Source of the DNA: Heteronotia binoei
Taxonomy: Eukaryota
Assembly: GCF_032191835.1 (NCBI RefSeq)
Contig: NC_083237.1
Location: forward strand, 17,980,001-18,044,000
DNA length: 64,000 bases
Reading direction: 5' to 3'
Below, piece by piece: positions 39,056 through 63,430 of this stretch. The notes under the pieces were generated by a model. The model ran no database searches. It had not been told where the DNA came from and saw nothing but the letters and a program-made list of their open reading frames with translations. Made by a program: the position numbers and the translations under genes. Position 1 is the first letter of the stretch. Every line of letters begins with the position of its first letter.

Positions 39056-40518
39056 CAGGGGTGGCCAATGGTAGCTCTCCACATGTTTTTTGCCTACAAC
39101 TCATCCGCCTAAACTTGCAGGCCGAGCGGTCCCCTTATTACTTTATGCCGATGACACTACCATCCTCTCTTGTACAAGAGTGGGCCTGCAAAGGTATTTG
39201 AATGCCTTTTATGACTACTGTAATTGTAATTCACTTACTATCAATTACACCAAATCTAAAGTAGTTGTCTTTTCAAACTGCTGGCGCCCACAGAGATGGT
39301 TTATTGGCAATTCAACAATCGAGCAAACAAAAAAATTTAAATACTTGGGGATCACTTTTAACCACAAGTTAAGCTGGGTTTCACATCGTAACAACACCGT
39401 CAACTTGGCTAAATGTTCAGCTGCTCAAATTAAACAGTTTTTCTTTGCAAGGGGCAACCAATTAGTTCCAGCAGCTATTAAAGTGTTCAAAGCCAAAACG
39501 CTTGCCCAAATCCTCTATGGTATCCCTATTTGGATCTCAGCTTTTACCAGGAAAGTGGAGGGCATTCAAGCCTCATTCTTTAGACAAATTCTTGGTTTGC
39601 CAAAATGTGTGTCCTACTTTGCTCTCTGCTCTGAAGTGGGTCAGTCTTTGGTGGAGACAAAAGCCTGGATTGCAGTGTTTAAATTCTGGCTCAAAATTCA
39701 TTTTAGAACAGATCCCAACAGCCTTCTTGATTGTATGAAAAGAGACCCATATATTTCATCCTGGACAGCAGTGCTTCTGTCTAAACTCAATCAATTGGGG
39801 TTAGAGGTAGATGATTTTTCTACCGCTGATGAGTCATATATCTTCAGATGTATTAAACTGAGACTATGGGAATCGGAGGATACGAAATTACGGCCAACTG
39901 ACCCTTATATTTGCTCTCCGGCTTCCTTAGGTCTTTATGCTTTTTGTGGCAAAATGCCCAATTATCTATCAGACCTAACCACTCCAAGTCATCGCAGGGC
40001 GTTTATGTTGGCTAGACTAAACGCGTTTCCCTCCAAAGTTTTACAAGGGAGATATCAGCGAGTCCCTTTAGCCGACAGACTTTGCTCCTGTGGAGCAAAT
40101 ACCCCTGACTCAATCCAGCATATATTGCTTGATTGTTCTTTATAACATAACCTCCGTAAAGATTTATTTGGCAAGCTTTCTTTTTCTCCAGATTTGTCCA
40201 TTCTGCCACCCTGTTATTATTTATTGAGTGATACAGAGGGGGTGGTTAGTGAGGCTGTGGCAAAATTTCTGGCTGACATCCTTAAATTTAATTCTGACCA
40301 TGTTTGAATGCATCTGTAAGCTCGGTTTTATCTTGATTTTATCTCCAATGTTTAAATTTTTATATTCTGCGTATTTTTATCTGAATCTATTATGCCATTA
40401 AAGGTTTGGTATGGTATGGCCTACAACTCCCATCAGCCCCAGCCATTGGCCATGCTGGCTGGGGCTGATGTGAGTTGTAGGCAAAAAACATCTGGAGAGC
40501 TACCGTTGGCCACCCCTG
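39056..40518. mobile_element. hAT-like MITE split by a LINE insertion
   Basis: TIRs caggggtggcca / tggccacccctg; 8-bp TSD CAATATGG at 39048-39055 and 40519-40526. Confidence 0.9.
39103..40418 (+). mobile_element. 5'-truncated non-LTR retrotransposon (RT C-terminal half plus Cys/His knuckle; RTE-X-like, clade uncertain)
   Basis: LLYADD, FKYLG, RLCSCG...IQHILLDC; tail ggtttggtatggtatgg; 11-bp TSD GCCTACAACTC at 39092-39102 and 40419-40429. Confidence 0.85.
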
Positions 40519-43969: not shown

Positions 43970-46953
43970 TTAGCAATTACTTTCTTCGTCAGCGAAAGCC
44001 AGTCGGAAGAGGAAGGTCTTGCAGGCCCTGCGGAACTGTTCAAGGTCCCGCAGGGCCCGCATTTCCTCTGGAAGTTGGTTCCATAGGTTCGGGGCTACAG
44101 AGGAGAAGGCCCGATTGCGGGTGCATTGCAGCTTCACCTCTCTCGGTCCGGGGGTGGTCAACAAGTTTTTTCCAGCTGACCTCAGTGCTCTCTGCGGTTC
44201 ATATGGGGAAGGACGGTCCATAAGGTAGACAGGTCCTCGACCATATAGGGCTTTAAAGGTAATGACCAGCACTTTGTAACGAACCCGGTATATAACTGGC
44301 AGCCAGTGCAGCTCGCGCAGTCCAGGCTGTATGTGCTCCCATTTAGGGAGCCCCAGCAACAGTCTGGCCGCTGCATTCTGCACCAGCTGCAGCTTCCGGG
44401 TTCGGTACAGAGGCAGCCCCATGTAGAGGGCATTACAGTAATCCAGTCTCGAGGTGACCGTTGCGTGAAGTACTGTTGCCAGATCTTGGCGCTCTAGGAA
44501 GTGAGCCAGCTGCCTTGCCCGCCTCAGGTGGAAAAAGGCTGACTTGGCAGTGGCTGCAATCTGGGCCTCCATTGATAATGAAGGCTCCAGTAGAACTCCC
44601 AGACTCCTAACCCGGTGCGCCACTTTCAGTGGTGCCCCGTCGAAGACCGGAAGAGGTATTTCCCTTTCCCGGGCGCCCCGACCCAGGCAAAGGACTTCTG
44701 TCTTCGCTGGATTCAGTTTCAGCCCGCTCCCCCTCAACCACGTTGCCATATCCTGCAAGGCCCGGTCTAAATTCTCAGGGACGCAGTCAGGCCGGCCGTC
44801 CATCAGCAGATAGAGTTGGGTGTCATCTGCATATTGATGGCACCCAAGTCCATATCTCCTGGCAATCTGGGCAAGAGGGCGCATATAGATATTGAATAAC
44901 ATTGGTGAGAGAACTGCCCCCTGAGGCACTCCACAATCCAGTGTGCGCCTCCGGGACCACTCGCCACCAATTGCCACCCTTTGTCCCCGATCCTCGAGGA
45001 AGGAGGAGAGCCATTGTAAGGCAGACCCCCTCACCCCTATATCGGCGAGGCGGCGGGTCAGTAGCTGATGGTCGACCATGTCGAACGCGGCCGACAGATC
45101 TAACAACATCAGCACCGCCACACTGCCCCGATCCAGGTGCCGTTGGAGATCATCTACCAGGGCGACCAGTACTGTCTCCGTCCCATAACCCGGGCGAAAG
45201 CCGGACTGGCAAGGGTCTAGGATGGAAGCGTCATCCAGAAAGCTCTGCAACTGCGACGCCACTGCCCTCTCTATTATTTTACCTAAAAACGGTAAATTAG
45301 AGACCGGTCGGTAGTTTGCCAATTCGGCCGGATCTGCTGTACTTTTTTTCAAGAGGGGTCGGACCAAGGCCCCTTTCAGGGGTGATGGAAAGCGCCCCTC
45401 TGAGAGGGATCTATTTATAATGTCCCGTAGAGGACATTCAAGCTCCCTCAGGCAGGATTTAGTTAGCCAGGAGGGGCATGGGTCCAGGTCGCAAGTTGTA
45501 GGGCGCACAGAGGAGAGAATTCCGTCAACTTCCTCCAGGCTGAGCGGGTCGAAATGATCCAGAGTTAAATCAGAAGACAGGCATAGGGCCTCGGGCTCAT
45601 GTACTGTATCTAAGGTGATGGGCAGGTCCTGGCGGAACAACGTGATTTTGTCTGCAAAAAATTTCGCAAAAGCCTCACAGCCTATTTCTAATTCTCTAAC
45701 GTTTGGTCTGCCCTGGGGCAGTGTAGTTAAATGTCCAATTATTTTAAACAATTGTGCCGGGCGCGAATTTGCAGACGCAATCTTGGCTGCGAAGTACTTC
45801 TTCTTCACGGCCTTGACTGCCATCTCATATGACCTCATAAACGTTCTGTAGGATGTTCTCGCCGCTTCACCACGAGTGCGCCGCCACTGCCTCTCTAGTC
45901 GCCGGAGTCCTTGTTTCAACCGGCGTAGCTCCAGGGTATACCAAGGAGCCAGCCTTGAACGAGGGCGCAGAGGACGTCGGGGTGCGATCTCATTGATTGC
46001 CCCAGATAGCCGGTCTTGCCAGGCATCAACCAGGGCATCAAGGGAATCGCAAGGGGGCCAAGGATCCCAAAGAGCCGTTTGGAACTGTTCCGGGTCCATC
46101 AGGCTCTGCGGGTGAGCCAAAATAGGCTCTCCACCCTTACAGGGTTGTGGTAGCGTCTCCATACGAGCCTTGAGGGCTAAGTGATCCGACCATGGTATCG
46201 CCTCCGTTGCGATTTCGTTCACTTTAATCCCAGCCGCAAAGGTCAGATCTAATGTGTGCCCAGCCTGATGTGTGGGAGTCGTAACAAATTGGGAGAGTCC
46301 CAGTGTCGCCATGGAAGACACTAGGTCCATCGCCTGAGTGGAAGCCGCGTCATCGGCGTGGACATTGAAGTCACCCAGGACCAGAAGCCCTGGGTACTCC
46401 AACGCCCAGCCGGACACCGCCTCCATCAGGGATGGTAAGGCGCTGGCCGGTGCGTTAGGCGGACGGTACACCAGCCAGATCGCCAACCTCTCCCCGACAT
46501 CTAACGCAAGGCCGACACATTCAACACCGTCGATCTTTGGGGCCGGGAGGGCCCGGAAGGAGTAAGCCTCCCATATGAATACCGCCCCCCCCCCGCCCCC
46601 CCAATCCGCGACTGGTGGAAGACCGAGTAACCCGGGGGAGTCATCTGGGAGAGTGCCATTGTCTCTCCCTCTTGAACCCAGGTCTTGGTCACGCAAGCCA
46701 GGTCTGCATCCTGCCGAAGCAGGAAGTCCCTAATGGTCTCGATCTTATTATTTATAGACCTGGCGTTGCATAACACCAGTGTCGGACGCGGGCAATTTCT
46801 CTTGGCCCCCCTTCTTGTCACCGTTGGGATGGGAAGTAGACTAGAAGGGGGCTGAGCACTGTTTTGTCTCTGTCTCCTTCTCTCATATCTCCGTCCATTC
46901 CCACCGTCATATCTTCCCCTCCCCAGGAGCACTGGAATCCCCTGACCAGTCAT
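43970..46953 (-). pseudogene. L2 ORF2 (endonuclease plus reverse transcriptase) with one frameshift in a G-run at ~46585-46602
   Basis: LCNARSINNK...VTKTW, GDFNVH, GHTLDL, SDH, NYRPVSNLPFLGK, QSGFR, LDLSAAFD, YADDTQLY, RLDYCN, LQLVQNAAARL. Confidence 0.9.
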
Positions 46954-47349
46954 CCCAAGCCTATTCTTTGATGGTTATATTAAGTTCGGCTGACTAGTTT
47001 ACATGCACAGCACAGATCCCCGGCCCACCCCTGTCCTCAGTTCCCAATTGTCTAGTTCACCAAAATCTTTCCTAATTGATTAGTAAATAAAGAATTCTTA
47101 CTTAGCACAGTACTAAAACCTAATTCTTAAAATTTTTAAAGTGCTAACATGAATAAATAATCAATTAATTAATTAATCCTATATGCATTTAAATACATAA
47201 AATACACAATAATAATCCGATTTCTAATCAATTTAAAATTTCTAATCCAATTTCTAATCAATTTAAAATTAATTCATTGTTAATAATTCTAATAGGTGAC
47301 CAATAGTTAATTAGGCAACAAAGATGAAATTAAGGAGGTGAGGTAGGGT

Positions 47350-47755
47350 TGTCGGTGCGGGTGCTAGCAGAGAGAGCTGTGAGATGTGCCCGACACTGAG
47401 CTCCAGGAAAGAAATCAGCCAGACACCTGCAGCTAGTGCCAAAGTAGTGTATTTACAGTATATACAACTCGTGCTCACTAGTGCAGTCCAATATATTAAT
47501 CACAGGAACAAAATGCTTTGCCAGCACGTCCACTCTCAAAGAGAGACCTGTGCATTACAGACACAGTCCACTTATAGTTCAGTCAGCCAATCCTGGCAGT
47601 CCACTCTCATGCTGACTCAGCAGGTTCCTTCACTTGTCTTCAGCCGGCTCAAACCAGCCTGTTGATAAGGTCACTGTGACCTAGCCTGCCGGCTAGATCA
47701 CCAGCTGTCATTACAGAGCTGTCAACCTGGGTTAAGATAGATTCCTTAACCAACA
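47350..47755 (-). mobile_element. Solo LTR (406 bp) of a copia family related to the element at 59393
   Basis: Termini TGTCGG...CCAACA; 5-bp TSD AGGGT at 47345-47349 and 47756-47760; colinear similarity with 59393-59790. Confidence 0.92.
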
Positions 47756-48764
47756 AGGGTGTAGTTCTTAAAGTGCTGTTAGTTGGTGTAAAAATTTTTA
47801 GAAACGAATGTCCAGGTTTTAGGCGTCTTCGGCGCTTTGTGGCGGCTTTAAAGTGCAGGTGCTGTTTTCTGGTATAGAGACAGTTTTTGGGTGCTGTTCT
47901 TAGTATAATTTTTTGAAGCATGGATGGAAGAGCTTCTTGGCTGATGGCCCTGCCTCGGGTGAGGGGGGTGTGGGGGCGGAAGAATACGGGAGCGGGGGGG
48001 GGGGCTAGAGGGGAGCAAGGAGGAAGAGCAAGAAGAAGAAAGGGGGGGCGAGGACAGAGACCGGGGTGTCCACCGAGACCTACGTCCCGGGGCAGTCCAT
48101 TCCTCCGCTCGCTCACACCCTCTCAGCTCCGTCACCCTCCACAGCTACCCCACTCACTCGACTCACCCCTCTCCCTCCTCGTTGTGTCAGTTCCGCACCC
48201 CAGTCCTCTTGCGAAGGGCTGCTCCAGCTGTTCGCCTATGGCCGCACCCACTCCTTCCCAATCTCGGCGTCGCCGGCGGTAGCGATGTTTTCAGCAGCTC
48301 GGAACAGCCACGCTCCTTTCCTGCACTCAGTAGAACCAAGCAAGCAGAAGCCCCGCCATGACCTCCGTCGGCTCCACATTCCGTTCTCTTTGCGCCTCTG
48401 CGTTCTCCTCACCGGCACCGGCTCAGTCCTTCCCGGTTTCCGCTGGACGCCAGCCCACGGCTGTGTCCCGGCCCTGTCTCAGTGGACCCCTGCAGCCCGC
48501 CGCTCACGCCTCCAACTCCGCCAACAGCCGACAGCCGCCGCCTGGACCTCGGTTCTATGGTGATTTGTTGTTTTTAGTTCGCTCGTTGTTGTTGTTAGTA
48601 GTTGCTATAGTTATAACAGCTATTGTAACAGCTGTTATAGTTAAGTTGTTATCAGTCTGCGGGAGCCCTAGCACAAGGCTTCTACCGCCGCCATTACAAT
48701 CTAAGTATTGTGTATAGGCATTATGAAAATGAATTTGGGGTGACTTTGGAAGGTTGAGGGTTCA

Positions 48765-49482: not shown

Positions 49483-50905
49483 TATTTATTTATTTATTTT
49501 AGAATTTATATCCCGCCCTTCCCACAAGTGGCTCAGGGCGGCTTCCAACAATAAATCCGACACAAAAATTAAACAATATTTAAACATGTAAGGAATTAAA
49601 CATTTAAAAACAGATAAAACCTTAAAAATTAATAAATATTCCAAATATATAAAAGAAATCTGGCAACTTGCATTAAATTCTCAAGCTAGGTGTAAGCTAG
49701 CCGGAAGAGGGTCGTCTTACAGGCCCTGCGGAACTGAACAAGGTCCCGCAGGGCCCTCACCTACTCCGGCAGCTGATTCCACCATGTAGGGGCCATAACA
49801 GAGAAGGCCCTTTCTCTGGTGGATTTCAAGCGGGCTTCTTTTGGCCCAGGGATAGTAAGGAGATTTTGTGTTCCCGACCTCAGTACTCTCTGGGGAACAT
49901 GTGGGGAAAGACGGTCCTCCAGATAGACAGGTCCCCAGCCATATAGGGCTTTAAAGGTGATAACCAGCACCTTGTACCAGACTCGGTATATCACTGGGAG
50001 CCAGTGCAGGGTCCGGAGACCTGGCTGAATGTGTCCCCACTTTGGGAGACCCAGTAACAGCCGGGCCGCGGCATTCTGCACCAGCTGCAATTTCCGAGTT
50101 TGGGACAGGGGCAGCCCCATGTAGAGGGCATTACAGTAGTCCAACCTCGAGGTGACCGTAGCATGGATCACTGTTGCTAGGTCGTCGCGCTCCAGGAAGG
50201 GGGGCAACTGCCTTGCCCGCCTAAGGTGAAAAAACGCAGACTTGGCAGCGGCTGCTATCTGAGCCTCCATCTTTAAGGAAGGCTCCAATAGCACCCCCAA
50301 GCTCCTGACCCTGTCCGCCGCTATCAGCGGCGCACCGTCAAAGACTGCTAGGGGGATTCCCCCTCCCGGGCCACGGCGACCCAGGCAAAGGACCTCTGTC
50401 TTCGCAGGATTAAGCTTCAGCCCGCTCAGTCTGAGCCACTCAGCCACGGCATGTAATGCCCGATCTAGATTTTCCGGGACGCAGGTTGGCTGGCCGTCCA
50501 TCAATAGATAGAGCTGGGTGTCATCAGCGTACTGGTGACACCCTAGCCCATACCTTCGGGCAATCTGGGCAAGAGGCCGCATATAGATGTTAAATAACAT
50601 CGGGGAGAGAACCGCCCTTGGGGCACACCACAATCGAGTGTGCACCTCCGGGATAGCTCCCCCCCAACTGCGACCCTTTGTCCCCAACCTTCCAGGAAAG
50701 AGGAAAGCCACTGTAAGGCCAACCCCTGAATCCCCGCGTCGGCGAGGCGACCCTTCAGTAGCCGATGGTCGACCGTGTTGAACGCAGCCGACAGGTCTAA
50801 CAGCATCAGCACTGCCGAGCCACCCCGATCCAGATGCCGTTGAAGGTCATCTACTAGGGCAACCAGCACCGTCTCCATCCCATGTCCCGGGCAAAAGCCA
50901 GACTG
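49483..50905 (-). mobile_element. 5'-truncated L2 (RT 3' half, frameshifted)
   Basis: LLDLSAAF, YADDTQLY, RLDYCNALY; (ATTT)n tail at about 49483-49500. Confidence 0.9.
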
Positions 50906-51033: not shown

Positions 51034-51245
51034 GGATGGTGGCTCAGTGTTGGTAGAGCATCTGCTTGGTATGCAGAAGGTCCCAGGTTCAATTACTGGC
51101 ATTTCCAACTAAAAAAGGGCCAGGCAAATAGGCATGAAAAACCTCAGCTTGAGACCCTGGAGAGCCGCTGCCAGTCTGAGTAGACAAGACTGACTTTGAG
51201 GGACCGAGGGTCTGATTCAGTAAAAGGCAGCTTCATATGTTCATA
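51034..51245 (+). mobile_element. tRNA-head SINE with a CR1-like tail; copies at ~3240, 42826, 54540 and 57597
   Basis: ggctcagtg.tggtagagcatctgcttgg...ggttcaa head; gacaagactgactttga..gaccgagggtctgattcag tail. Confidence 0.75.
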
Positions 51246-53330: not shown

Positions 53331-54915
53331 ACAGAGAACCTATTCACACAAGCTATCTGTTTTCATTTTTTCTCAAGGATAACTGGATCACAGCCTGCCT
53401 ATATTTCTCCTTTTGCTGATCTGGATTTTTTTTCCTCTCCTTTTCCCACTTTTGCTTGACTTTTCTGAAAGATCCTAAAGCCTGAATGATGCAGGGTTGT
53501 CTTGGAAGGGCATTTCAGTAGCCTGAGATTCAAGGTACCAGTCAAGAATCAGCTTTATATTGACTAGAACAGTTACTTCTATGAATGGCTCTTTAATCTC
53601 CATTCCCCCTAGCACTGTATTCCTTTTTCTTGCAAATTTCCTAGTTATTTTAAGATCAAAATCTGCAACAATTAGTCATGATTCAGATCAGTGTAGATGA
53701 AATTGCTGTAGCAAGCATTTCTAAAAGCCGAGCCACTTTTCAGTGAGCACCCCGTGTGAAGTACAACCAAGTCAAAACTGAATATAAAACACCACAATTA
53801 ATTAAAATTGTTAAAACAAAGAAGTCAATCAGCAAAGGACAGCAAGATATCATTTGCTCACTAGTAACTCCTTAAAATCCAGAAATCACTTAAAAAATAG
53901 TTTTAATCCGCCTCTGAAAGTCTACCAGTTAGAAGATGCCAGGCGGGAAGGCATGTTATTCTTCTGCCAGTTGCTGTGAAATACCCACATTTCATAAGAA
54001 TTTCAGCCTAGGCACAGAATTCAGCTCCTGGATAAACTTTTCCTTAAAAACAAAAGCAAGTCTCTTGTCCTTACGGTTATGGAGAGATTTGAAATGCTTA
54101 CTGAAATCTCAGGAGCTGCAGTTGGAAAGGATGTAGCCGGGGTGCGATGCTTCTGTACTCTGCCCTGCCTCCTCTCCTTTATAATTAGGTGAACCATAAA
54201 AGTAGCTCAATAAAAACTGTGTGAAATGAAATTGCCTGATCTATACAGCTCGTTAACACAGGAGGTGGGTTCCCCCAGAAACATTTACTTGTAGAAAGAA
54301 ACATGGGAGAGCAGATTGGAGCGAGCTCTACAATTTAACAGAATAAAATGAAGGAGAAAACTCTTGGATTCCATTCACAGCTCCCCGAGGTTAAAGTAGC
54401 ATAAGGATGTAATATTGTCAAGTTGCAACTGATATGGCAACCCCTCAAGGGGCTTTCAAGGCAAGCAATAAGCAGAGGTGGTTTGCCTTCTTCCACATAG
54501 CAATGCTGGTCTTCCTTGGTGGCCTCCCATGCAAGTACGGTGGCTCAGTGGTAGAGCATCTGCTTGGTAAGCAGAAGGTCCCAGGTTCAATCCCCGGCAT
54601 CTCCAACTACAAAGGGTGCAGGCAAGCAGGCATGAAAAACCTCAGCTTGAGACCTTGGAGAGCCGCTGCCAGTCTGAGTAGACAATACTGACTTTGATGG
54701 ACGCAGGATCTGATTCACTATAAGGCAGCTTCATATGTTCATATGTACTCATGATGGCCAACCCTGTATAGCTTCCAAGTTCCGGCAACCTGGACTCATC
54801 TGGGCTCTTCAGACTGTTGAATGTAGAACGTAGTATACTAGGATAGAAGAGCAGGCCTGAGGGAAAATTAAACACTATCCCTACTCTTTTTCTCCTGCCA
54901 GAACCAGCCATCATC

Positions 54916-55863
54916 ATGAATGGATCCGCCATTTCAGAGTTCATTCTGCTGGGCTTCTCCTGCTCCGGCATTTCTCACTTCTTCCTTTCCTCTTTGGTCT
55001 TGGTCTGCTGCATCACCATTCTTCTGGGCAACTTCCTGATCATGGTGACGGTGCGATCCGAGCCCCGGCTCCTCCACTGCCCCATGTATTTCTTCCTAGC
55101 CAACCTGTCTCTCCTAGATGTGTCCTTGGGTTCAGTGGCTGCTCCAAAGTTAGCAGTTGACTTGTTAAACTGCGGCCACACCATTTCCTATGGGGGTTGC
55201 ATGGCCCAGCTTTTCTTCCTCCACTTCTTTGGGGGTGCTGAGATGCTCCTCCTCACGCTCATGGCCTACGACCGCTACGTGGCCATCTGCCACCCACTGA
55301 GGTACATGGCCATCATGGACCGGCAACTCTGCTTCAGGCTCCTCCTGCTTTGCTGGGCAGGAGGCCTCCTTCATTCCACCATTCAGATGGTGGCAGTTGC
55401 CCAGTTACCATTCTGTGGGCCCAACGTGCTGGACAATTTCTACTGTGACATCCCACAAATGATCGCACTAGCTTGTACGGAGACTTCCGCTGTTGAGATT
55501 CTCATGGTGGTCAATAGCAGCCTGTTAACTCTGCCCTGTTTCCTGGCCTTGTTGGTTTCCTATGCCACAATCTTGGTCGCCTTCTGTGGCCGCTTTGGGA
55601 AGGCAGGCAGGAAGGCTTTTTCCACTTGCATCTCCCACTTGATGGTGGTCAGCCTCTTCTACGTGCCTTGTGTCTTTGTGTACCTGAAGCCCTCCTCCAG
55701 CTCCCAGGTGGACAAGATAGCCTCCGTGTTCTACATGGTGGGCACCCCTGCCCTCAATCCCCTTATCTATGCTCTGAGGAACCAAGAGATTAAGGAGGCC
55801 ATGGGGAAATGGAAGAGCAAGCAAAAACTATTCCCGATTGCTGCAAATAGAGTACATGTGTGA
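54916..55863 (+). CDS. OR4Q3-like: Olfactory receptor OR4Q-like, copy 2, 315 aa
   Basis: Colinear paralogue of 41526-42464 with full OR motifs; acceptor-like ctctttttctcctgccag just upstream. Confidence 0.92.
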   Translation: MNGSAISEFILLGFSCSGISHFFLSSLVLVCCITILLGNFLIMVTVRSEPRLLHCPMYFFLANLSLLDVSLGSVAAPKLAVDLLNCGHTISYGGCMAQLFFLHFFGGAEMLLLTLMAYDRYVAICHPLRYMAIMDRQLCFRLLLLCWAGGLLHSTIQMVAVAQLPFCGPNVLDNFYCDIPQMIALACTETSAVEILMVVNSSLLTLPCFLALLVSYATILVAFCGRFGKAGRKAFSTCISHLMVVSLFYVPCVFVYLKPSSSSQVDKIASVFYMVGTPALNPLIYALRNQEIKEAMGKWKSKQKLFPIAANRVHV

Positions 55864-56935: not shown

Positions 56936-59644
56936 TATGTTCCCTCACAACAAAGTCAAAGAACTTTCTATCTATATAATGGTGCTTCAAGTGCATATGG
57001 CTATGAACAGGAGGCCGTTCTTGATGCAGGTTCCGCAACATAAAAGTTACAAAGATATTATTCACTTGTGGAATTCAGTTCCCAAAGACGTGGGACAACT
57101 TGGGCACCCTTGTGGGGAAAGGTCAACTGTAGCTATGAAACCTCAATATTCAGAGCGGGTTACCTCAAATTGCAAGATTCTGGGATGTAAGAAGGGCTTG
57201 TCCTCAACACCCTCCCCAAATGAAGACACAAGACCACCATACATGAGTTTAATTGGTTTATTTAAACAGATGGTTTACATCAGAAGCTATTAGCCAAATT
57301 AACGACACAATGTGCTAGGTAGCCTACTGCTAATGGCAATCTTCCCCTTCCCTAGCCTGCTGCACACACAATGAAAGATCTGGTTGATGCTGCTCAGCAC
57401 CAAGGTTGTTCCAGCCTGTCCCACTGTACAATGAATGATGGTCTGTTACACAAATGGACCATTATTGTGTGATGCCTCAAGGTGATCTCTGATTCACCCT
57501 ACCTATAATGAGCATCTTATCCTATTCTCACCATCCTAATTATGGTCTAACCATTCCAAGGACCAAGCTAATTTATCCCAACCTCCCTTAGATAGGTGAG
57601 GGGCTGTTGCTTTGCATGCAAAAGGTTCCAGGTTCAATCCCTAGCACCTCCAATTAAAAGGACCAAGTAGTAGATCATGTGACCCTGAAAAACCAATCTG
57701 AGTACACATTTCTGACCCCGATGGCCCAGCTATCTTCTTAAATGTAAGGCAGCTTGTGTGTGTTCATTTGTGACAACACGAAGCAGGTGAGAAGCAGTTT
57801 CCTAAATTCCCAATTCTTTGGGGGAATTTTGGGTCTTCATTTTTTGTTTTTGAAATCTGGCTTTTTATGTGTATGATAAATCTCCTTCATTAATTTCAAA
57901 GTCATATAATTAAGCCCAAGGCTCTGGCCAAACATGTTTAAAACAATTCTTCCCCAGAGTTCCCTCAAAGTGTTTGGGAATCAGATTCCAGCGGCAAGAA
58001 CCCCAAAGGCTGATGGGCATTTTTCATAGGGAACGAACAGAGCTCGGGAAAGATTTGTAGCACTGAGAAAGAGCACACAACAAAAAGCTCCTGGTCCAGT
58101 TTCACTGGTTACTTCACTGGCTTCTGTGCCATAATATGGACATAGAACTCAACTGAGTGATTCAAATTTAAATAAATGCAAAAGTCAGTTCTTCTGATAT
58201 ACGTGAGGTCCAAATAAGCCAAAAGTAGGCTGTGGGGTGGGTGGTGGTGAAAACATTTTAGAAAGGATTTGAGCCAAAACCAAACTTTGGCCTGAACATA
58301 AATCTGAAGCACCTCATGGGAGGAGACAGCAGGTCTTTTTTGTAGCAGGAACTCCTTTGCATATTAGGCCACACCCCCATGATGTAGCCAATCTTCCTGG
58401 AGCTTACAGTAGGCCCCATACTAAGAGCCCTGCAAGCTCCAGGAGGACTGGCTCCATCACGGGGGTGTGGCCTAATATGCAAAGGAGTTCCTGCTACATA
58501 AAAAGCTCTGCGAGACAGCATCCTTTGGGGTTTATCTGGTTCCAGTTGAGAAAACTGGTCTGAAGCTGGATAAAAACCAAACGTTACATCATTAAAACTC
58601 AACATAATTTGGGCAGAGGACAAGAACAACACACTAAACTGTAGCAGCCCCAAGAAAGATTAGCCCGCCACTGCAAAAGCACTCGAGAGCAATTCCACTT
58701 TAAGTAATATCCATTGAATTAAAAGATTTGAGCCTGGTAGCACCTGACCAGCAAGATGTTCAGCGTAGAGGCTTTTGAGAATCAGAGTTTTGACTCTTAG
58801 AATCATAAAGTTGGAAGGGACCTCCAGGGTCATCTAGTCCAACCCCCTGCACAATGTAGGAAACTCACAAACACCTCCCCCTAAATTTACAGGATCCTCA
58901 TTGCTGTCAGATGGCCATCCAGCCTCTGTTTAAAAACCTTCAAGGAAGGAGAGCCCACCACCTCCCGAGGAAGCCTGTTCCACTGAGGAACCGAAAGCGT
59001 TTGTCCTGGAAATCTTGTAGTTATTTATGGTGCTACTTGCTGTTCTACTGCAGACCAAGAAGGCTATCCACCTGAAAGTATCTTCAGTGGGATAAGGTGT
59101 GTGATAGGAGGCGACCCAAAAGATGGATCTTTGTCTCCAGTGATGCTCAAGTATAAATGGAAGGTGAATACAGCTTAGAAAATTCACACTAGCTTCATAA
59201 TCTTCTTTTCAGATGGGTCACTCCAACACCAAACCTACATGTTCATTATGTTACTGCCAGCTTTGGGGGGATCGTGTGCAAAAAAAGCCCCCAAAGGTCT
59301 TCTCCCCTTCTCTGTCCACCAACAGCCTCCAACTTACAGCATTCTTCCTACCCACCTACTTTCATGCCCTGCCTCTGAATTCTTCCTCTGCTTGTCGGAG
59401 CGGGAGTAGCAGAGTGAGGGAGATGACTTGCCCGACACAGGGCTTCAGGAAAGAAAATCAGGCAGACACGTGCAACTAGTGCCAAAAGGTGTATTAACAT
59501 ATATACACGACAAGTGCTCTCTTGTGCAGTCTATACAATATCACCTCCACGGACAAAGTGCTTCGCCTAACCACCATCTCACAGGGAGAGACCTGTGTGA
59601 TGCACACACAGATCATATATAGTCCAAGCAGCCAATCCTGGCCG

Positions 59645-59657
59645 TGCTGACTCAGCA
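59645..59657. promoter_or_regulatory. Consensus T-MARE (Maf/AP-1) site in the LTR; also at 62966-62978 and 47610-47622
   Basis: TGCTGACTCAGCA exact match. Motif match only. Confidence 0.7.
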
Positions 59658-59702
59658 GATTGCATCACTTGGCTTCTGCCGGCTCAAGCCGGTCTGCTGA
59701 TC

Positions 59703-59717
59703 AGGTCACTGTGACCT
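59703..59717. promoter_or_regulatory. Consensus estrogen response element in the LTR; also at 63024-63038 and 47668-47682
   Basis: AGGTCActgTGACCT equals the AGGTCAnnnTGACCT consensus. This is a motif match only; function is untested. Confidence 0.7.
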
Positions 59718-59875
59718 AGCCTGGCAGCTAGATCACCAGCTGTCATACTGTAGCTGTCGGACTGGGTTTATGTAGATTCTTGCTCCAACACACCTCCTAA
59801 TCTATTTAAACCCAGTGCACCAAAACACTTTACACAGTTTACATACATGTCCACCAGCAACATTACAGTTCATAT

Positions 59876-62536
59876 TTACGTAGCTCGGAACCCTTTCCGG
59901 AATTCGTTCAGGAACTCATCATGATTGTAAAACACATCATCGTGTTCCTGTTCAGCCAGCTCTTTCAGACGCTTGGCTTCAGCCTCCTTCTCCCTTGCCT
60001 CGCACTCTGCCACCCAGGCTTTCCATTTCTTAGCCTTTTCTTTTAACATTTCCTCAAATCCGGGTGGGTCTGGATTGACAGTCAGAGTGACATAGGGACA
60101 CTTGTACCTAGCGGGACGTTGGCCTTTGGTGGACCTGGCAGACACCCGTGGCCCTGTGCTTGGACCAGCTTTGTCTTCTTCGGGTTGCTCTGTTCCCACC
60201 TCCTGGGCTGGTTGCTCTGCCCCTGTAATTGGGTGTTGAACCTCCTGACTCTCACACTTTACCTCCAGTTCCTGCATTTGAGGCTCTGCCTCCTGACTCT
60301 GCTCGTCAGGCTCTGTGCCAGCATTCGGCTCACCTTCTCCAGCCCCACTGGGTGCCACCTCCTGGGCTGGAGTTCTGGGCTGCGCTCCAACATCGTTATC
60401 GCTACTTGGCAGCAGGACAAATTGTTTCTGCAAGGAGTGCAACCTTGGCCAGCTGCTTTCTTCATTGAACTGGGCACTCTTACTAAGTGTTATCTTGCTT
60501 TTGCTATTGCAGAAACGATAACACCTGGCCCTTGGCTTGTAGCCCAGAAAAATTAGGCTCTCTGCCCGGACATCCCCCTCCCCGCTACTCGTGGAGTGGA
60601 TGCCAACCCGAGCCCGTGACCCAAAGACTTTTGAAGAACTCAAATCTGGGGTCTTGTTCAACAGTAACCTGTAAGGCACATTTTTCACAGTATTACACCA
60701 AACCCTATTTTGTAAAAAAACAGCTGCATGTATGGTTTCTGCCCAATAGGTCATTGGCAGTTGTGCATCCTCTAACATGCAATACATCACATTCTGCAAT
60801 ACAGCCCCATGCCCATTTTCTCGGGGCGTTGCCGGGTTCGTCAGACGGTGGGCAATGCCCTTGTTCTCCAGCCAACGTTTCATCTGGTTAGATAAGAATT
60901 CCCCCCCTCTGTCGGTTTGTACAGCTAGGAGATTAACCCCTAATTGTCTCTCCACTGCTTTGACCCACTTGGTGAATGTCTTATACACCTCAGACTTATG
61001 CACCATGGTGAAAACCCACGCGTACCTCGTGTGGTCGTCGGTGGCCACCAAGCAGTATCTCCTCCCCGACAGACTCTTTGGCAATGGGCCAATAACGTCT
61101 AAATGGACTAGTTCCAGGGCTCGTGTGCTTTCCCTTGAGCTTTCTTTAGCAACAGCACACGCCTTGCTTTTGGTCTTCTTGCAGACCTGGCAATCCAAGT
61201 AACATTTGCAAGGATTTACTTTCCAACTAGGCACAAGCTCCAGGGTTTTCTTTAACGCCCTAAATCCGCAGTGCCCAAGTCTCCTATGGAGCAAATGTAT
61301 ACAATTATTGTGCACAGGCTCATTCGACACCTGAGCCACCTGGGCACAATCACTCTGGACCACATACAGTTTACCTTCCCTCTTTCCTGTCACAAGCAAC
61401 TTTCCCCCACCTCCCAGGATTTTGCAGCAGGTTTTCTCAAATCTCACCTGGTATCCCTGGTCAAACAGTGTGCTAACACTCAACAGGTTAGACTGCAGTG
61501 AGGGTACATACAACACATTTTGCAACATACATTTCAGTGCAGGAAATTCCACATTGCCGGAGCAAACAGAATTGGCAGTGGTCCCATCAGCCAATCTCAC
61601 ATACTTATGCTCAGGACTGTCAATGTTTTTCAACAACTCCTTCTCGCAGCAGAGATGGCTCGTTGCCCCGGAGTCTAAAATCCAAGCAGACCCTGTGCTC
61701 TCTACTGCAGACGTGACCAGCCGGGTTGCTTCCTCACACGGGCTGGCGGTCCTCCGCTCTCGCCGCACACGCCCCCGCCTCTTCTCCCTCTCAGGGCAAG
61801 CTCGGAGCAGGTGCTGCGACGACCCGCATCCATAGCAGCGACGGACTGCAAACGCAGTCGGCTCCACTTCCTCCACCTTCGGACGCCTGCCAGCAGCAAA
61901 AGCTGGCTCATTCTTGGCTGTCTTCCCGGACACACCGATAACAGCACGCTGCCCGGCCGACACCCCCGGACAGCTCACGGCCGCAATTCTCTCTTGGAAG
62001 TCAAGCAGGTGGGCACAGACGTATTCCATGGTCAGGGTCGCTACGTCCACCGTCTCCAGAGAAGTTATCAGGGGAGTGTACTCAGGTGGCAACGACGACA
62101 GCAAAATGTACACTCTGTCGTCTGGAGCTACAGTCTTGCCTCTTGCCTCCAGCTCAACGAAACAGTCCGTTAGCCGTTTGATGTGATCTTTCACACACCC
62201 TCCAGCCGGCATAACGGTGCGGAACATCCTCCTTGTCAAGGCCACGAGGGAACCAGCAGTGGTGCTAACATGCACCGCACTCAACGCGTCCCAGGCAGCC
62301 TTGGGAGTGTCCTTCCCTCGCACATAAACCAGCTGGTCATCTCCTATAGACAGCACTATGTTGGCCAGTGCCTTATCCGATAACACAGTCTCGGCAGGAG
62401 ATAAGTCAGCAGGGGGGTTACTCACGAACAGCCATTGCCCTTCACGCTTGAGGTAGTGTTGCATTCTCAGGCTCCACACCGCGTAGTTGGCTGAGGTGAG
62501 CTTCTCAACGGCTACTCCAAGCTGTTGCTGAGCCAT
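59876..62536 (-). CDS. Copia Gag-protease-integrase polyprotein, 886 aa
   Basis: KLTSANYAVW (copia Gag), CYGCGSSQHLLRAC (CCHC), WILDSGATSH (protease), HRRLGH...CQVC, VHLDVIGP, QTDRGGEF. No YVDD RT motif. Confidence 0.92.
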   Translation of the reverse strand: MAQQQLGVAVEKLTSANYAVWSLRMQHYLKREGQWLFVSNPPADLSPAETVLSDKALANIVLSIGDDQLVYVRGKDTPKAAWDALSAVHVSTTAGSLVALTRRMFRTVMPAGGCVKDHIKRLTDCFVELEARGKTVAPDDRVYILLSSLPPEYTPLITSLETVDVATLTMEYVCAHLLDFQERIAAVSCPGVSAGQRAVIGVSGKTAKNEPAFAAGRRPKVEEVEPTAFAVRRCYGCGSSQHLLRACPEREKRRGRVRRERRTASPCEEATRLVTSAVESTGSAWILDSGATSHLCCEKELLKNIDSPEHKYVRLADGTTANSVCSGNVEFPALKCMLQNVLYVPSLQSNLLSVSTLFDQGYQVRFEKTCCKILGGGGKLLVTGKREGKLYVVQSDCAQVAQVSNEPVHNNCIHLLHRRLGHCGFRALKKTLELVPSWKVNPCKCYLDCQVCKKTKSKACAVAKESSRESTRALELVHLDVIGPLPKSLSGRRYCLVATDDHTRYAWVFTMVHKSEVYKTFTKWVKAVERQLGVNLLAVQTDRGGEFLSNQMKRWLENKGIAHRLTNPATPRENGHGAVLQNVMYCMLEDAQLPMTYWAETIHAAVFLQNRVWCNTVKNVPYRLLLNKTPDLSSSKVFGSRARVGIHSTSSGEGDVRAESLIFLGYKPRARCYRFCNSKSKITLSKSAQFNEESSWPRLHSLQKQFVLLPSSDNDVGAQPRTPAQEVAPSGAGEGEPNAGTEPDEQSQEAEPQMQELEVKCESQEVQHPITGAEQPAQEVGTEQPEEDKAGPSTGPRVSARSTKGQRPARYKCPYVTLTVNPDPPGFEEMLKEKAKKWKAWVAECEAREKEAEAKRLKELAEQEHDDVFYNHDEFLNEFRKGFRAT

Positions 62537-62682: not shown

Positions 62683-62713
62683 GCGCAGCGGAAGCGCCCT
62701 GGGCCCATAACCC
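62683..62713 (-). promoter_or_regulatory. Extended primer-binding site complementary to the 5' half of initiator tRNA-Met
   Basis: The + strand gcgcagcggaagcgccctgggcccataaccc matches the recalled tRNAi-Met nt 10-40 at 29 of 31 positions. Confidence 0.88.
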
Positions 62714-63119
62714 TGTCGGAGCGGGAGTAGCAGAGTGAGGGAGATGACTTGCCCGACACAGGGCTTCAGGAAAGAAAATCAGGCAGACACGTGCAACTAG
62801 TGCCAAAAGGTGTATTAACATATATACACGACAAGTGCTCTCTTGTGCAGTCTATACAATATCACCTCCACGGACAAAGTGCTTCGCCTAACCACCATCT
62901 CACAGGGAGAGACCTGTGTGATGCACACACAGATCATATATAGTCCAAGCAGCCAATCCTGGCCGTGCTGACTCAGCAGATTGCATCACTTGGCTTCTGC
63001 CGGCTCAAGCCGGTCTGCTGATCAGGTCACTGTGACCTAGCCTGGCAGCTAGATCACCAGCTGTCATACTGTAGCTGTCGGACTGGGTTTATGTAGATTC
63101 TTGCTCCAACACTGCTTAC

Positions 63120-63430
63120 TAAGGACATCAGTGAAGCCGTGTTGGATCAGGCCAATGGCCCATGCAGTCCAACGGTCTGTGTCACATGATGGCCAAAAAA
63201 CCAGGTGCCATCAGGAGGTCCATTAGTGGGGCCAAGATACTAGAAGCCCTCCCATTGTTGCCCCCCAGCACCAAAAATACAGAGCATCACTTGCCCCAGA
63301 CAGAGAGTTCCACCAGTAGCCACTGATGGACCTCTGCTCCATATGTTGATCCAATCCCCTCTTGAAGCTGTCTATGCATGTAGCTGCCATCACCTCCTGT
63401 GGCAGTGAATTCCATGTGTTAATCACAACC
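63120..63430 (-). mobile_element. CR1 3' fragment
   Basis: NTWNSLPQEVMAATCIDSFKRGLDQHMEQRSISG. Confidence 0.85.

What the first reader, a model, noticed from the sequence alone, without database searches (positions are those of the whole stretch)
59630..59760. LTR promoter carries a perfect estrogen response element and a perfect Maf element, both kept in a diverged LTR relative
Seen: all three LTRs contain AGGTCActgTGACCT (59703, 63024, 47668) and TGCTGACTCAGCA (59645, 62966, 47610). They also share agccaatcctgg (CCAAT box) and cagctgtca (E-box/TGACAG). A TATA-like sequence follows in the element's sense. The solo LTR differs by many substitutions and indels elsewhere, yet these motifs are exact. 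Established: these are the full ERE and T-MARE consensus sequences. Twelve fixed bases occur at about 6e-8 per position under uniform composition. Inference: these copia lineages may tie transcription to estrogen (ovary/vitellogenesis) and Maf/CNC stress signalling. They also place EREs inside an OR cluster, 3.5 kb downstream of one OR4Q gene and between the two OR4Q paralogues.
Basis: partly seen in the sequence, partly recalled or inferred. Interest (0 to 1): 0.78.

Follow-up and report, generated by a model that had tools for sequence, protein, structure and literature searches.

The report
Gecko copia LTR with oestrogen-receptor site
The promoter region of a young jumping gene in a gecko genome carries textbook binding sites for the oestrogen receptor and for Maf/AP-1 factors. 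A diverged relative keeps both sites exactly, so they are probably real control elements, but hormone control itself is untested.

Summary
AGGTCACTGTGACCT and TGCTGACTCAGCA each occur three times in the window, only inside LTRs. Two of the three LTRs belong to one element and are identical, so there are only two independent observations.

The element is a minus-strand Ty1/copia with 398-bp LTRs, a 5-bp target-site duplication (TSD), a tRNA-iMet-type primer-binding site (PBS) and a gag-PR-IN reading frame without reverse transcriptase. The third copy is a solo LTR with its own TSD, 76% identical to the pair.

In the element's sense the U3 order is E-box, ERE, MARE, inverted CCAAT, TATA. These motifs lie in the four longest exactly conserved blocks between the two lineages. 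ERE plus MARE show 0/28 mismatches against 25% elsewhere (Fisher p = 4e-4; 6e-3 within the U3 core).

The ERE matches the Xenopus vitellogenin A2 ERE over 20 nt, spacer and one flank included. The host is a gekkonid, probably Heteronotia binoei.

Selected U3 transcription-factor sites are well supported. Oestrogen responsiveness, Maf versus AP-1, and any effect on the OR genes remain inference. No further family copies could be fetched. RNA-library contigs show roughly 95-97% relatives in three organisms but no transcription start site.

The scan noted the same motif pair on other DNA of this genome. This is a new member of a known kind: hormone-response elements carried by LTRs and other repeats.

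The parts
62714..63111 (-). 5' LTR of the copia element (398 bp, TGTTGG...CCGACA in sense)
   Evidence: identical to 59393-59790. PBS follows at 62713 downwards.
59393..59790 (-). 3' LTR of the same element
   Evidence: 0 differences from the 5' LTR. A purine-rich tract (sense GATTAGGAGGTG) lies at 59791-59802, just upstream in sense.
59876..62536 (-). 886-aa gag-protease-integrase reading frame without RT/RNase H
   Evidence: Retrotran_gag_2, Pol_BBD, gag_pre-integrs, rve and SH3_retrovirus domains. No RVT_2 domain.
62683..62713 (-). Primer-binding site region (sense GGGTTATGGGCCC...), tRNA-iMet half type
   Evidence: sequence. One search lists another note on it. The tRNA match is from my own reading and was not tested here.
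63112..63116 (.). Target-site duplication CTGCT (+ strand), partner at 59388-59392
   Evidence: flanks
59388..59392 (.). Target-site duplication CTGCT (+ strand)
   Evidence: flanks
47350..47755 (-). Solo LTR of a diverged relative (406 bp), flanked by the 5-bp duplication AGGGT at 47345-47349 and 47756-47760
   Evidence: 76% identity to the pair over the full length
63024..63038 (.). Perfect IR3 oestrogen response element in the 5' LTR U3 (sense positions 74-88)
   Evidence: In sense, with its downstream flank, it reads AGGTCACAGTGACCTGATCA, the same as the Xenopus vitellogenin A2 ERE probe (PMC2577665).
59703..59717 (.). Same ERE in the 3' LTR
47668..47682 (.). Same ERE in the solo LTR
   Evidence: It lies in the longest exact block shared by the two lineages (21 nt).
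62966..62978 (.). Perfect TRE-type Maf recognition element in the 5' LTR (sense 134-146), with embedded AP-1 core and ARE core
   Evidence: The MARE and ARE definitions are in PMC3488259.
59645..59657 (.). Same MARE in the 3' LTR
47610..47622 (.). Same MARE in the solo LTR
   Evidence: It lies in a 14-nt exact block.
62953..62957 (-). Inverted CCAAT box (ATTGG in sense) in the 5' LTR. The 3' LTR copy is at 59632-59636.
   Evidence: 14-nt exact block shared with the solo LTR
62937..62942 (-). TATA box (TATATA, sense 170-175) in the 5' LTR. The 3' LTR copy is at 59616-59621. The solo LTR has CTATAAG.
63058..63063 (.). CAGCTG E-box overlapping TGACAG in the 5' LTR (sense 46-54). The 3' LTR copy is at 59737-59742.
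   Evidence: it lies in the second-longest exact block (20 nt)

Best explanation
The stretch is the U3 enhancer-promoter of a gecko Ty1/copia LTR family.

Read in the element's sense (minus strand), the first ~205 nt of the LTR carry, in order:
- a CAGCTG/TGACAG block;
- a perfect AGGTCA IR3 palindrome (ERE);
- a lineage-specific CCGG palindrome;
- a perfect TGCTGAGTCAGCA palindrome, which is a T-MARE holding an AP-1 core and an ARE core;
- an inverted CCAAT box;
- a TATA box about 30 nt ahead of the presumed start site.

The most likely mechanism is as follows. Dimeric host factors bind the two palindromes: a nuclear receptor of the ER/ERR type at the IR3, and a bZIP dimer (AP-1, Maf or CNC-small Maf) at the MARE. 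Together with NF-Y and TBP they drive transcription of the element's RNA. Element lineages that lost these sites stopped spreading, which is why the sites stay exact while the rest of the LTR diverged.

The oestrogen receptor is the best single candidate for the IR3. The site equals the high-affinity vitellogenin A2 ERE over 20 nt and has the CAG/CTG spacer favoured at bound sites.

Shown: the anatomy, the motif identity, and the excess conservation in one lineage pair. Inferred: which factors bind, hormone dependence, the start site, and the tissue.
For: - Motifs occur only in LTRs.
- The element's structure and orientation place them upstream of CCAAT and TATA in sense.
- The four longest exact blocks between the two LTR lineages (21, 20, 14 and 14 nt) are the blocks holding the ERE, the E-box/TGACAG, the MARE and the CCAAT box.
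- ERE plus MARE have 0/28 mismatches against 94/370 elsewhere: Fisher p = 3.9e-4 over the whole LTR and 5.8e-3 within U3 positions 46-190.
- CpG decay does not explain this. The non-CpG mismatch rate is 0.246, so the chance that 28 positions stay intact is about 4e-4.
- Only 13/384 15-mers and 21/386 13-mers are fully conserved.
- The ERE-to-MARE spacing is identical in both lineages.
- The only indel in that part of U3, 10 bp, lies between the MARE and the CCAAT box.
- Of the six 6-nt-arm palindromes in the young LTR (0.74 expected), only the ERE and the MARE persist in the relative.
- The site is identical over 20 nt to the vitellogenin A2 ERE probe.
- The C(A/T)G spacer is enriched at bound EREs (PMC2853111).
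- The identical LTRs and intact TSD show that the promoter belonged to a recently active lineage.
- Contigs of RNA libraries from three coded organisms cover the element and its LTR with 3-7% of letters differing, and none of the indels they list lies in U3.
Against: - The conservation test rests on one pairwise comparison, because two of the three LTRs are one observation. No further family copies could be obtained.
- The motifs were picked after they were seen, so the p-values are optimistic.
- Where the RNA-library contigs differ inside the LTR was not listed, so those contigs do not test the motifs.
- The contigs cannot show a start site, and DNA carry-over cannot be excluded. The one raw-read run held no reads.
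- A perfect ERE does not imply occupancy: 2.2% of perfect core EREs were bound at high confidence in MCF7 cells (PMC2853111).
- No data on sex, tissue or hormone were available.
Confidence: 0.55

Rival explanations
1. The IR3 is a real, selected site, but an oestrogen-related receptor (ESRRA/B/G) or another orphan nuclear receptor uses it in germ cells or early embryos. Transcription then does not depend on oestrogen. A retrotransposon needs germline or early-embryo expression to be inherited, and ERRs are known to bind palindromic EREs (my own knowledge, not tested here).
For: The same conservation evidence applies, because it does not tell one factor from another. The element was recently active and heritable, which needs germline expression.
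Against: The extended ERR half-site TCAAGGTCA is absent: the flanks read GCTAGGTCA and ATCAGGTCA. Both half-sites and the 3-nt spacing are kept exactly, which fits a dimer of the ER type.
Confidence: 0.2
2. The motifs are inherited from a common ancestor and stayed intact by chance or by local mutational coldness. They are consensus look-alikes with no role in the element's transcription.
For: There is only one independent comparison. The motifs hold no CpG. The whole stretch at sense 46-190 is less diverged (85%) than the rest (67-73%).
Against: Using the local rate, the chance of 28 intact positions is about 0.003-0.006. Excluding CpG positions changes nothing. Two separate 12-13-base full consensus palindromes placed correctly ahead of CCAAT and TATA are very unlikely by chance.
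Confidence: 0.12
3. The palindromes act as nucleic-acid structures, for example hairpins in the 3' U3 of the genomic RNA or in the cDNA, rather than as protein-binding sites.
For: The young LTR is enriched for palindromes: 6 against 0.74 expected, with 0 of 1000 shuffles reaching 6.
Against: Four of the six palindromes are not kept in the relative. The two that are kept are conserved in sequence with no compensatory change, and they equal two well-known dimer consensus sites. Six-nt arms with 1-3-nt loops make weak hairpins.
Confidence: 0.05
4. The main consequence is for the host. The LTR-borne EREs have been co-opted as hormone-sensitive enhancers, or as antisense promoters, for the neighbouring OR4Q3-like genes.
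For: Position only. The solo LTR lies between two ORs and the 3' LTR lies 3.5 kb past an OR. Both point towards OR genes on the opposite strand.
Against: The full element is a very recent insertion with identical LTRs, which leaves no time for co-option. There is no expression or conservation evidence. OR choice is not known to depend on oestrogen.
Confidence: 0.03

Closest known systems
MMTV LTR hormone response elements (glucocorticoid/progestin response elements in U3)
   Same: Steroid-receptor palindromes sit in U3 upstream of the TATA box of an LTR, so that element transcription could follow a host hormone. This comparison is from established knowledge and was not tested here.
   Different: MMTV is a betaretrovirus of mammals, with AGAACA-type elements and proven hormone induction. 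Here the element is a Ty1/copia retrotransposon of a gecko with an AGGTCA IR3, and there are no functional data.
ER-alpha-bound EREs inside human repeats (Alu, LINE, LTR, DNA elements; PMC2853111)
   Same: Repeats carry and spread EREs, and some of them act as estradiol-dependent enhancers in reporter assays.
   Different: Those are mostly imperfect EREs that arose in decaying copies and act on host genes. Here a perfect ERE is part of the element's own promoter and is kept between active lineages.
Xenopus vitellogenin A2 ERE
   Same: It is identical over 20 nt (AGGTCACAGTGACCTGATCA), including the spacer and one flank.
   Different: That ERE belongs to a host liver gene and has proven oestrogen control. 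The other flank differs here, and the context is a retrotransposon LTR.
Squamate Copia of the Mtanga clade (PMC11889832)
   Same: This is a Ty1/copia element in a squamate. All squamates examined, terrestrial ones and two sea snakes, carry Copia only of the Mtanga clade, which is very diverse there. The element shows the gag-PR-IN order, a 5-bp TSD and TG..CA LTR ends.
   Different: Clade membership is defined on RT/RNase H, which this copy lacks, so it could not be tested. The closest database proteins are only about 30% identical.
Stress-responsive LTR promoters with AP-1/bZIP-type sites (general class)
   Same: A TGA(C/G)TCA core lies in U3 ahead of the core promoter.
   Different: Here the site is the full 13-bp Maf palindrome rather than a bare 7-bp AP-1 site. 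Which bZIP dimer uses it is unknown.

Membership tests
Ty1/copia LTR retrotransposon | Direct LTRs ending TG...CA, flanked by a 5-bp target-site duplication | tested here: met
   398-bp LTRs with 0 differences and the TSD CTGCT (+ strand). The solo LTR has the TSD AGGGT.
Ty1/copia LTR retrotransposon | Domain order gag - protease - integrase - RT/RNase H, with copia-type gag and integrase | tested here: inconclusive
   Copia-type gag, Pol_BBD, the integrase core and the SH3-like domain are present in that order. RT/RNase H is absent. The copy is therefore a non-autonomous deletion derivative of a copia element.
Ty1/copia LTR retrotransposon | PBS next to the 5' LTR that matches initiator tRNA-Met, and a purine tract before the 3' LTR | tested here: inconclusive
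   GGGTTATGGGCCC... follows the LTR and GATTAGGAGGTG precedes the 3' LTR. The tRNA match was judged from memory and was not aligned here.
Canonical oestrogen response element | Inverted repeat of AGGTCA half-sites with a 3-nt spacer | tested here: met
   AGGTCActgTGACCT occurs three times. It equals the consensus ERE and the vitellogenin A2 ERE in PMC2577665. The spacer is of the C(A/T)G type.
Canonical oestrogen response element | Binding by ER and estradiol-dependent activation | not testable with these tools
   No ChIP, reporter or hormone-resolved RNA data could be reached. The run search gave only metatranscriptome contigs.
TRE-type Maf recognition element (T-MARE) | 13-bp palindrome TGCTGA(C/G)TCAGCA | tested here: met
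   The definition is in PMC3488259. The ARE core TGACNNNGC and the AP-1 core are embedded in it.
TRE-type Maf recognition element (T-MARE) | Occupancy by Maf or CNC-small Maf dimers rather than AP-1 | not testable with these tools
   No binding data.
Hormone-responsive LTR promoter (MMTV type) | Hormone response element in U3 upstream of TATA, in the element's sense | tested here: met
   The sense order is ERE (74-88), MARE (134-146), ATTGG (155-159), TATATA (170-175).
Hormone-responsive LTR promoter (MMTV type) | Transcription starts in the LTR and rises with the hormone | not tested
   Contigs cannot show starts and the raw-read run had no reads.

The most novel reading that the evidence does not exclude
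A copia family of geckos times its own transcription to the female reproductive cycle through a vitellogenin-type ERE in U3, in combination with a bZIP stress site. Retrotransposition would then be biased towards oestrogen-rich tissues and seasons, such as the vitellogenic liver, ovary and oviduct. Each new insertion would also seed a strong ERE into host chromatin, including chemoreceptor clusters.
Probability: 0.15. Interest if true: 0.7.

Novelty: new member of a known kind. Interest (0 to 1): 0.4.

Why it matters
If the oestrogen receptor really drives this LTR, it would be a hormone-gated retrotransposon outside the retroviruses and outside mammals. It sits in a lineage where Copia elements are young and active. 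It would be a natural system for two questions: how a mobile element picks the tissue and season of its activity, and how perfect hormone response elements are scattered through a reptile genome. If not, it is still a clean example of selection keeping short transcription-factor sites in an otherwise fast-diverging LTR.

Tried and rejected
1. More family copies through proteins. The exact ORF is not on record. The full ORF and the gag part alone find only relatives of 32% identity or less. No further LTRs could be fetched this way.

2. More copies through DNA patterns. The pattern of MARE, a 30-60-nt gap, then ERE found nothing in metagenome contigs or viral contigs. The bacterial genome collection was not scanned because it is irrelevant.

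3. Reads. The single read-laying run showed contigs from three coded organisms that differ from the element at about 3-7% of letters, including a 413-nt contig across the whole LTR with 16 differences. The positions of the differences inside the LTR were among the 342 rows not shown, so the motifs could not be scored there. Raw-read run X7 laid nothing, so there is no start-site or strand evidence.

4. Other copies in the window. BLAST of both LTRs and of the internal part against the window found only the three known LTRs.

5. CpG decay as an explanation for motif survival. Rejected.

6. RNA or DNA hairpin reading of the palindromes. Judged unlikely.

The consensus line that the alignment tool printed was not used.

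Full report
**Observation**

AGGTCANNNTGACCT matches three times in the 64-kb window, at 47668, 59703 and 63024, always as AGGTCACTGTGACCT. Shuffles give 0.02. TGCTGACTCAGCA matches at 47610, 59645 and 62966, and shuffles give 0. Both motifs occur only inside three related repeats.

**Anatomy**

- The repeats at 59393-59790 and 62714-63111 are 398 bp long with no differences. They are flanked by the 5-bp duplication CTGCT.
- Between them lies an 886-aa reading frame on the minus strand (59876-62536). It has copia-type gag, the Pol beta-barrel, the pre-integrase domain, the integrase core and the SH3-like domain, but no reverse transcriptase.
- A PBS-like GGGTTATGGGCCC... follows the minus-strand 5' LTR.
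- This is therefore a very young, internally deleted, non-autonomous Ty1/copia element lying on the minus strand.
- The third repeat, 47350-47755, is a solo LTR with its own duplication, AGGGT. It is 76% identical to the pair over its full length.
- Because the two LTRs of one element are copied from one template, the three motif occurrences amount to two independent observations.

**Host**

Five intact olfactory-receptor reading frames lie in the window. The one at 54916-55863 is 91% identical to a Gekko japonicus OR4Q3-like protein. It sits on a contig of the same length (68,086,271 nt) as a named Heteronotia binoei protein. The genome is therefore a gekkonid, probably H. binoei; this is an inference from the equal contig length. 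In a survey of Copia in metazoans, all squamates examined, terrestrial ones and two sea snakes, carried Copia only of the Mtanga clade, which is very diverse there (PMC11889832). This copy lacks the RT on which that clade is defined.

**Promoter layout**

| Feature (element's sense) | LTR positions |
|---|---|
| TGACAG/CAGCTG | 46-54 |
| ERE | 74-88 |
| CCGG palindrome | 99-112 |
| MARE | 134-146 |
| ATTGG (inverted CCAAT) | 155-159 |
| TATATA | 170-175 |

The solo LTR has the same order and the same ERE-MARE spacing, with CTATAAG in place of TATATA. Its only indel in this part of U3 is a 10-bp insertion between the MARE and the CCAAT block.

**Are the motifs better kept than their surroundings?**

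- In a global alignment of the two lineages, 304 of 398 positions match.
- The four longest exact blocks are 21 nt (holding the ERE), 20 nt (TGACAG/CAGCTG), 14 nt (MARE) and 14 nt (CCAAT).
- Only 13 of 384 15-mers and 21 of 386 13-mers are fully conserved.
- ERE plus MARE show 0/28 mismatches against 94/370 elsewhere: Fisher one-sided p = 3.9e-4. Against the better-kept U3 core alone (46-190; 22/117) the value is p = 5.8e-3.
- Leaving out CpG positions does not change this. The mismatch rate stays at 0.246.
- The young LTR has six palindromes with 6-nt arms, against 0.74 expected. Only the ERE and the MARE are kept in the relative.
- This supports selection on these two sites in the lineages that stayed active.
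- The caveats are serious. There is one comparison only, and the motifs were chosen after being seen.

**What the sites are**

- The consensus ERE is AGGTCACAGTGACCT. The Xenopus vitellogenin A2 ERE probe reads ...AAAGTCAGGTCACAGTGACCTGATCAA... (PMC2577665). The same 20-mer is used as an ERE in two other papers. In sense the LTR reads AGGTCACAGTGACCTGATCA, identical over 20 nt.
- The C(A/T)G spacer is the type enriched at ER-bound sites (PMC2853111).
- TGCTGACTCAGCA is the Maf recognition element. It embeds the ARE core TGACNNNGC (PMC3488259) and the AP-1 core.
- Sequence alone cannot tell ER from ERR-type receptors, or Maf and CNC-small Maf from AP-1.
- The same ER paper warns that only 2.2% of perfect core EREs in the human genome were occupied at high confidence in MCF7 cells.

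**Expression and relatives**

The run search found only metatranscriptome libraries. Contigs from three coded organisms, in two studies, cover the element with about 3-7% of letters differing. In X1 the three longest pieces differ at 3.2-4.7%. They include a 413-nt contig over the whole LTR plus 15 nt of leader, with 16 differences. None of the indels listed in the LTR falls in U3.

The positions of the substitutions in the LTR were not listed. Contigs cannot show starts. DNA carry-over cannot be excluded. The one raw-read run laid nothing. This shows that close relatives exist in other samples and is compatible with transcription, but it tests neither the motifs nor hormone control.

All attempts to fetch more LTR copies failed.

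**Earlier notes of this scan**

Unchecked notes report the same RT-less element elsewhere in this genome. They also report the same ERE plus Maf/AP-1 pair in another LTR, and a perfectly conserved ER site in the promoter of an intact 4.8-kb copia. These agree with a family-wide feature, but they are not independent tests.

**Verdict**

- The reading "selected U3 transcription-factor sites" is well supported for a single comparison.
- The reading "oestrogen- and Maf-controlled" is a reasonable but untested hypothesis.
- The suggested effect on the OR genes has no support beyond position.
- The kind is known: hormone response elements in LTRs, as in MMTV, and EREs carried by repeats, as in PMC2853111. 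I found no paper describing a copia LTR with a vitellogenin-type ERE in a reptile.

Noticed in passing
window 63120-63300: The DNA just outside the copia 5' LTR is an extremely abundant repeat in the RNA-library contigs of all three organisms. Summed word depth is 1e4 to 2.5e5, against about 100 for the copia. It looks like a SINE-type repeat.
   Followed up: no
window 51063-51114, 54561-54612, 57608-57659: Three copies of a tRNA-like SINE head (GGTCCCAGGTTCAAT...), 81-88% alike. A 195-nt duplication (51051-51245 and 54549-54743, 90% alike) lies upstream of the OR at 54916.
   Followed up: no
window 59876-62536 (-): The copia reading frame stops after the integrase SH3-like domain, with about 190 further residues that match no Pfam family. 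RT/RNase H is missing, yet the LTRs are identical, so the copy must have been mobilised in trans. Other notes of the scan report 3719-3720-nt copies of the same form elsewhere in the genome.
   Followed up: partly
window 62714-63111 against 47350-47755: The differences between the two LTR lineages are 43 transitions and 47 transversions, an unusually low ratio for neutral decay in a vertebrate. The 10-bp insertion between the MARE and the CCAAT box in the solo LTR equals one helical turn.
   Followed up: no
window 62900-62931 (sense LTR positions 181-211): Overlapping palindromes (TGTGTGCATCACACA and CACAGGTCTCTCCCTGTG) sit where the transcription start is expected. They are present only in the young LTR, and this is where the contigs of organism C show small indels.
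   Followed up: no
window 43970-46696 (-), 39090-40145 (+), 49761-50711 (-): LINE-type reading frames lie between the OR genes: endonuclease plus RT in one 908-aa frame, and RT fragments in the others.
   Followed up: no
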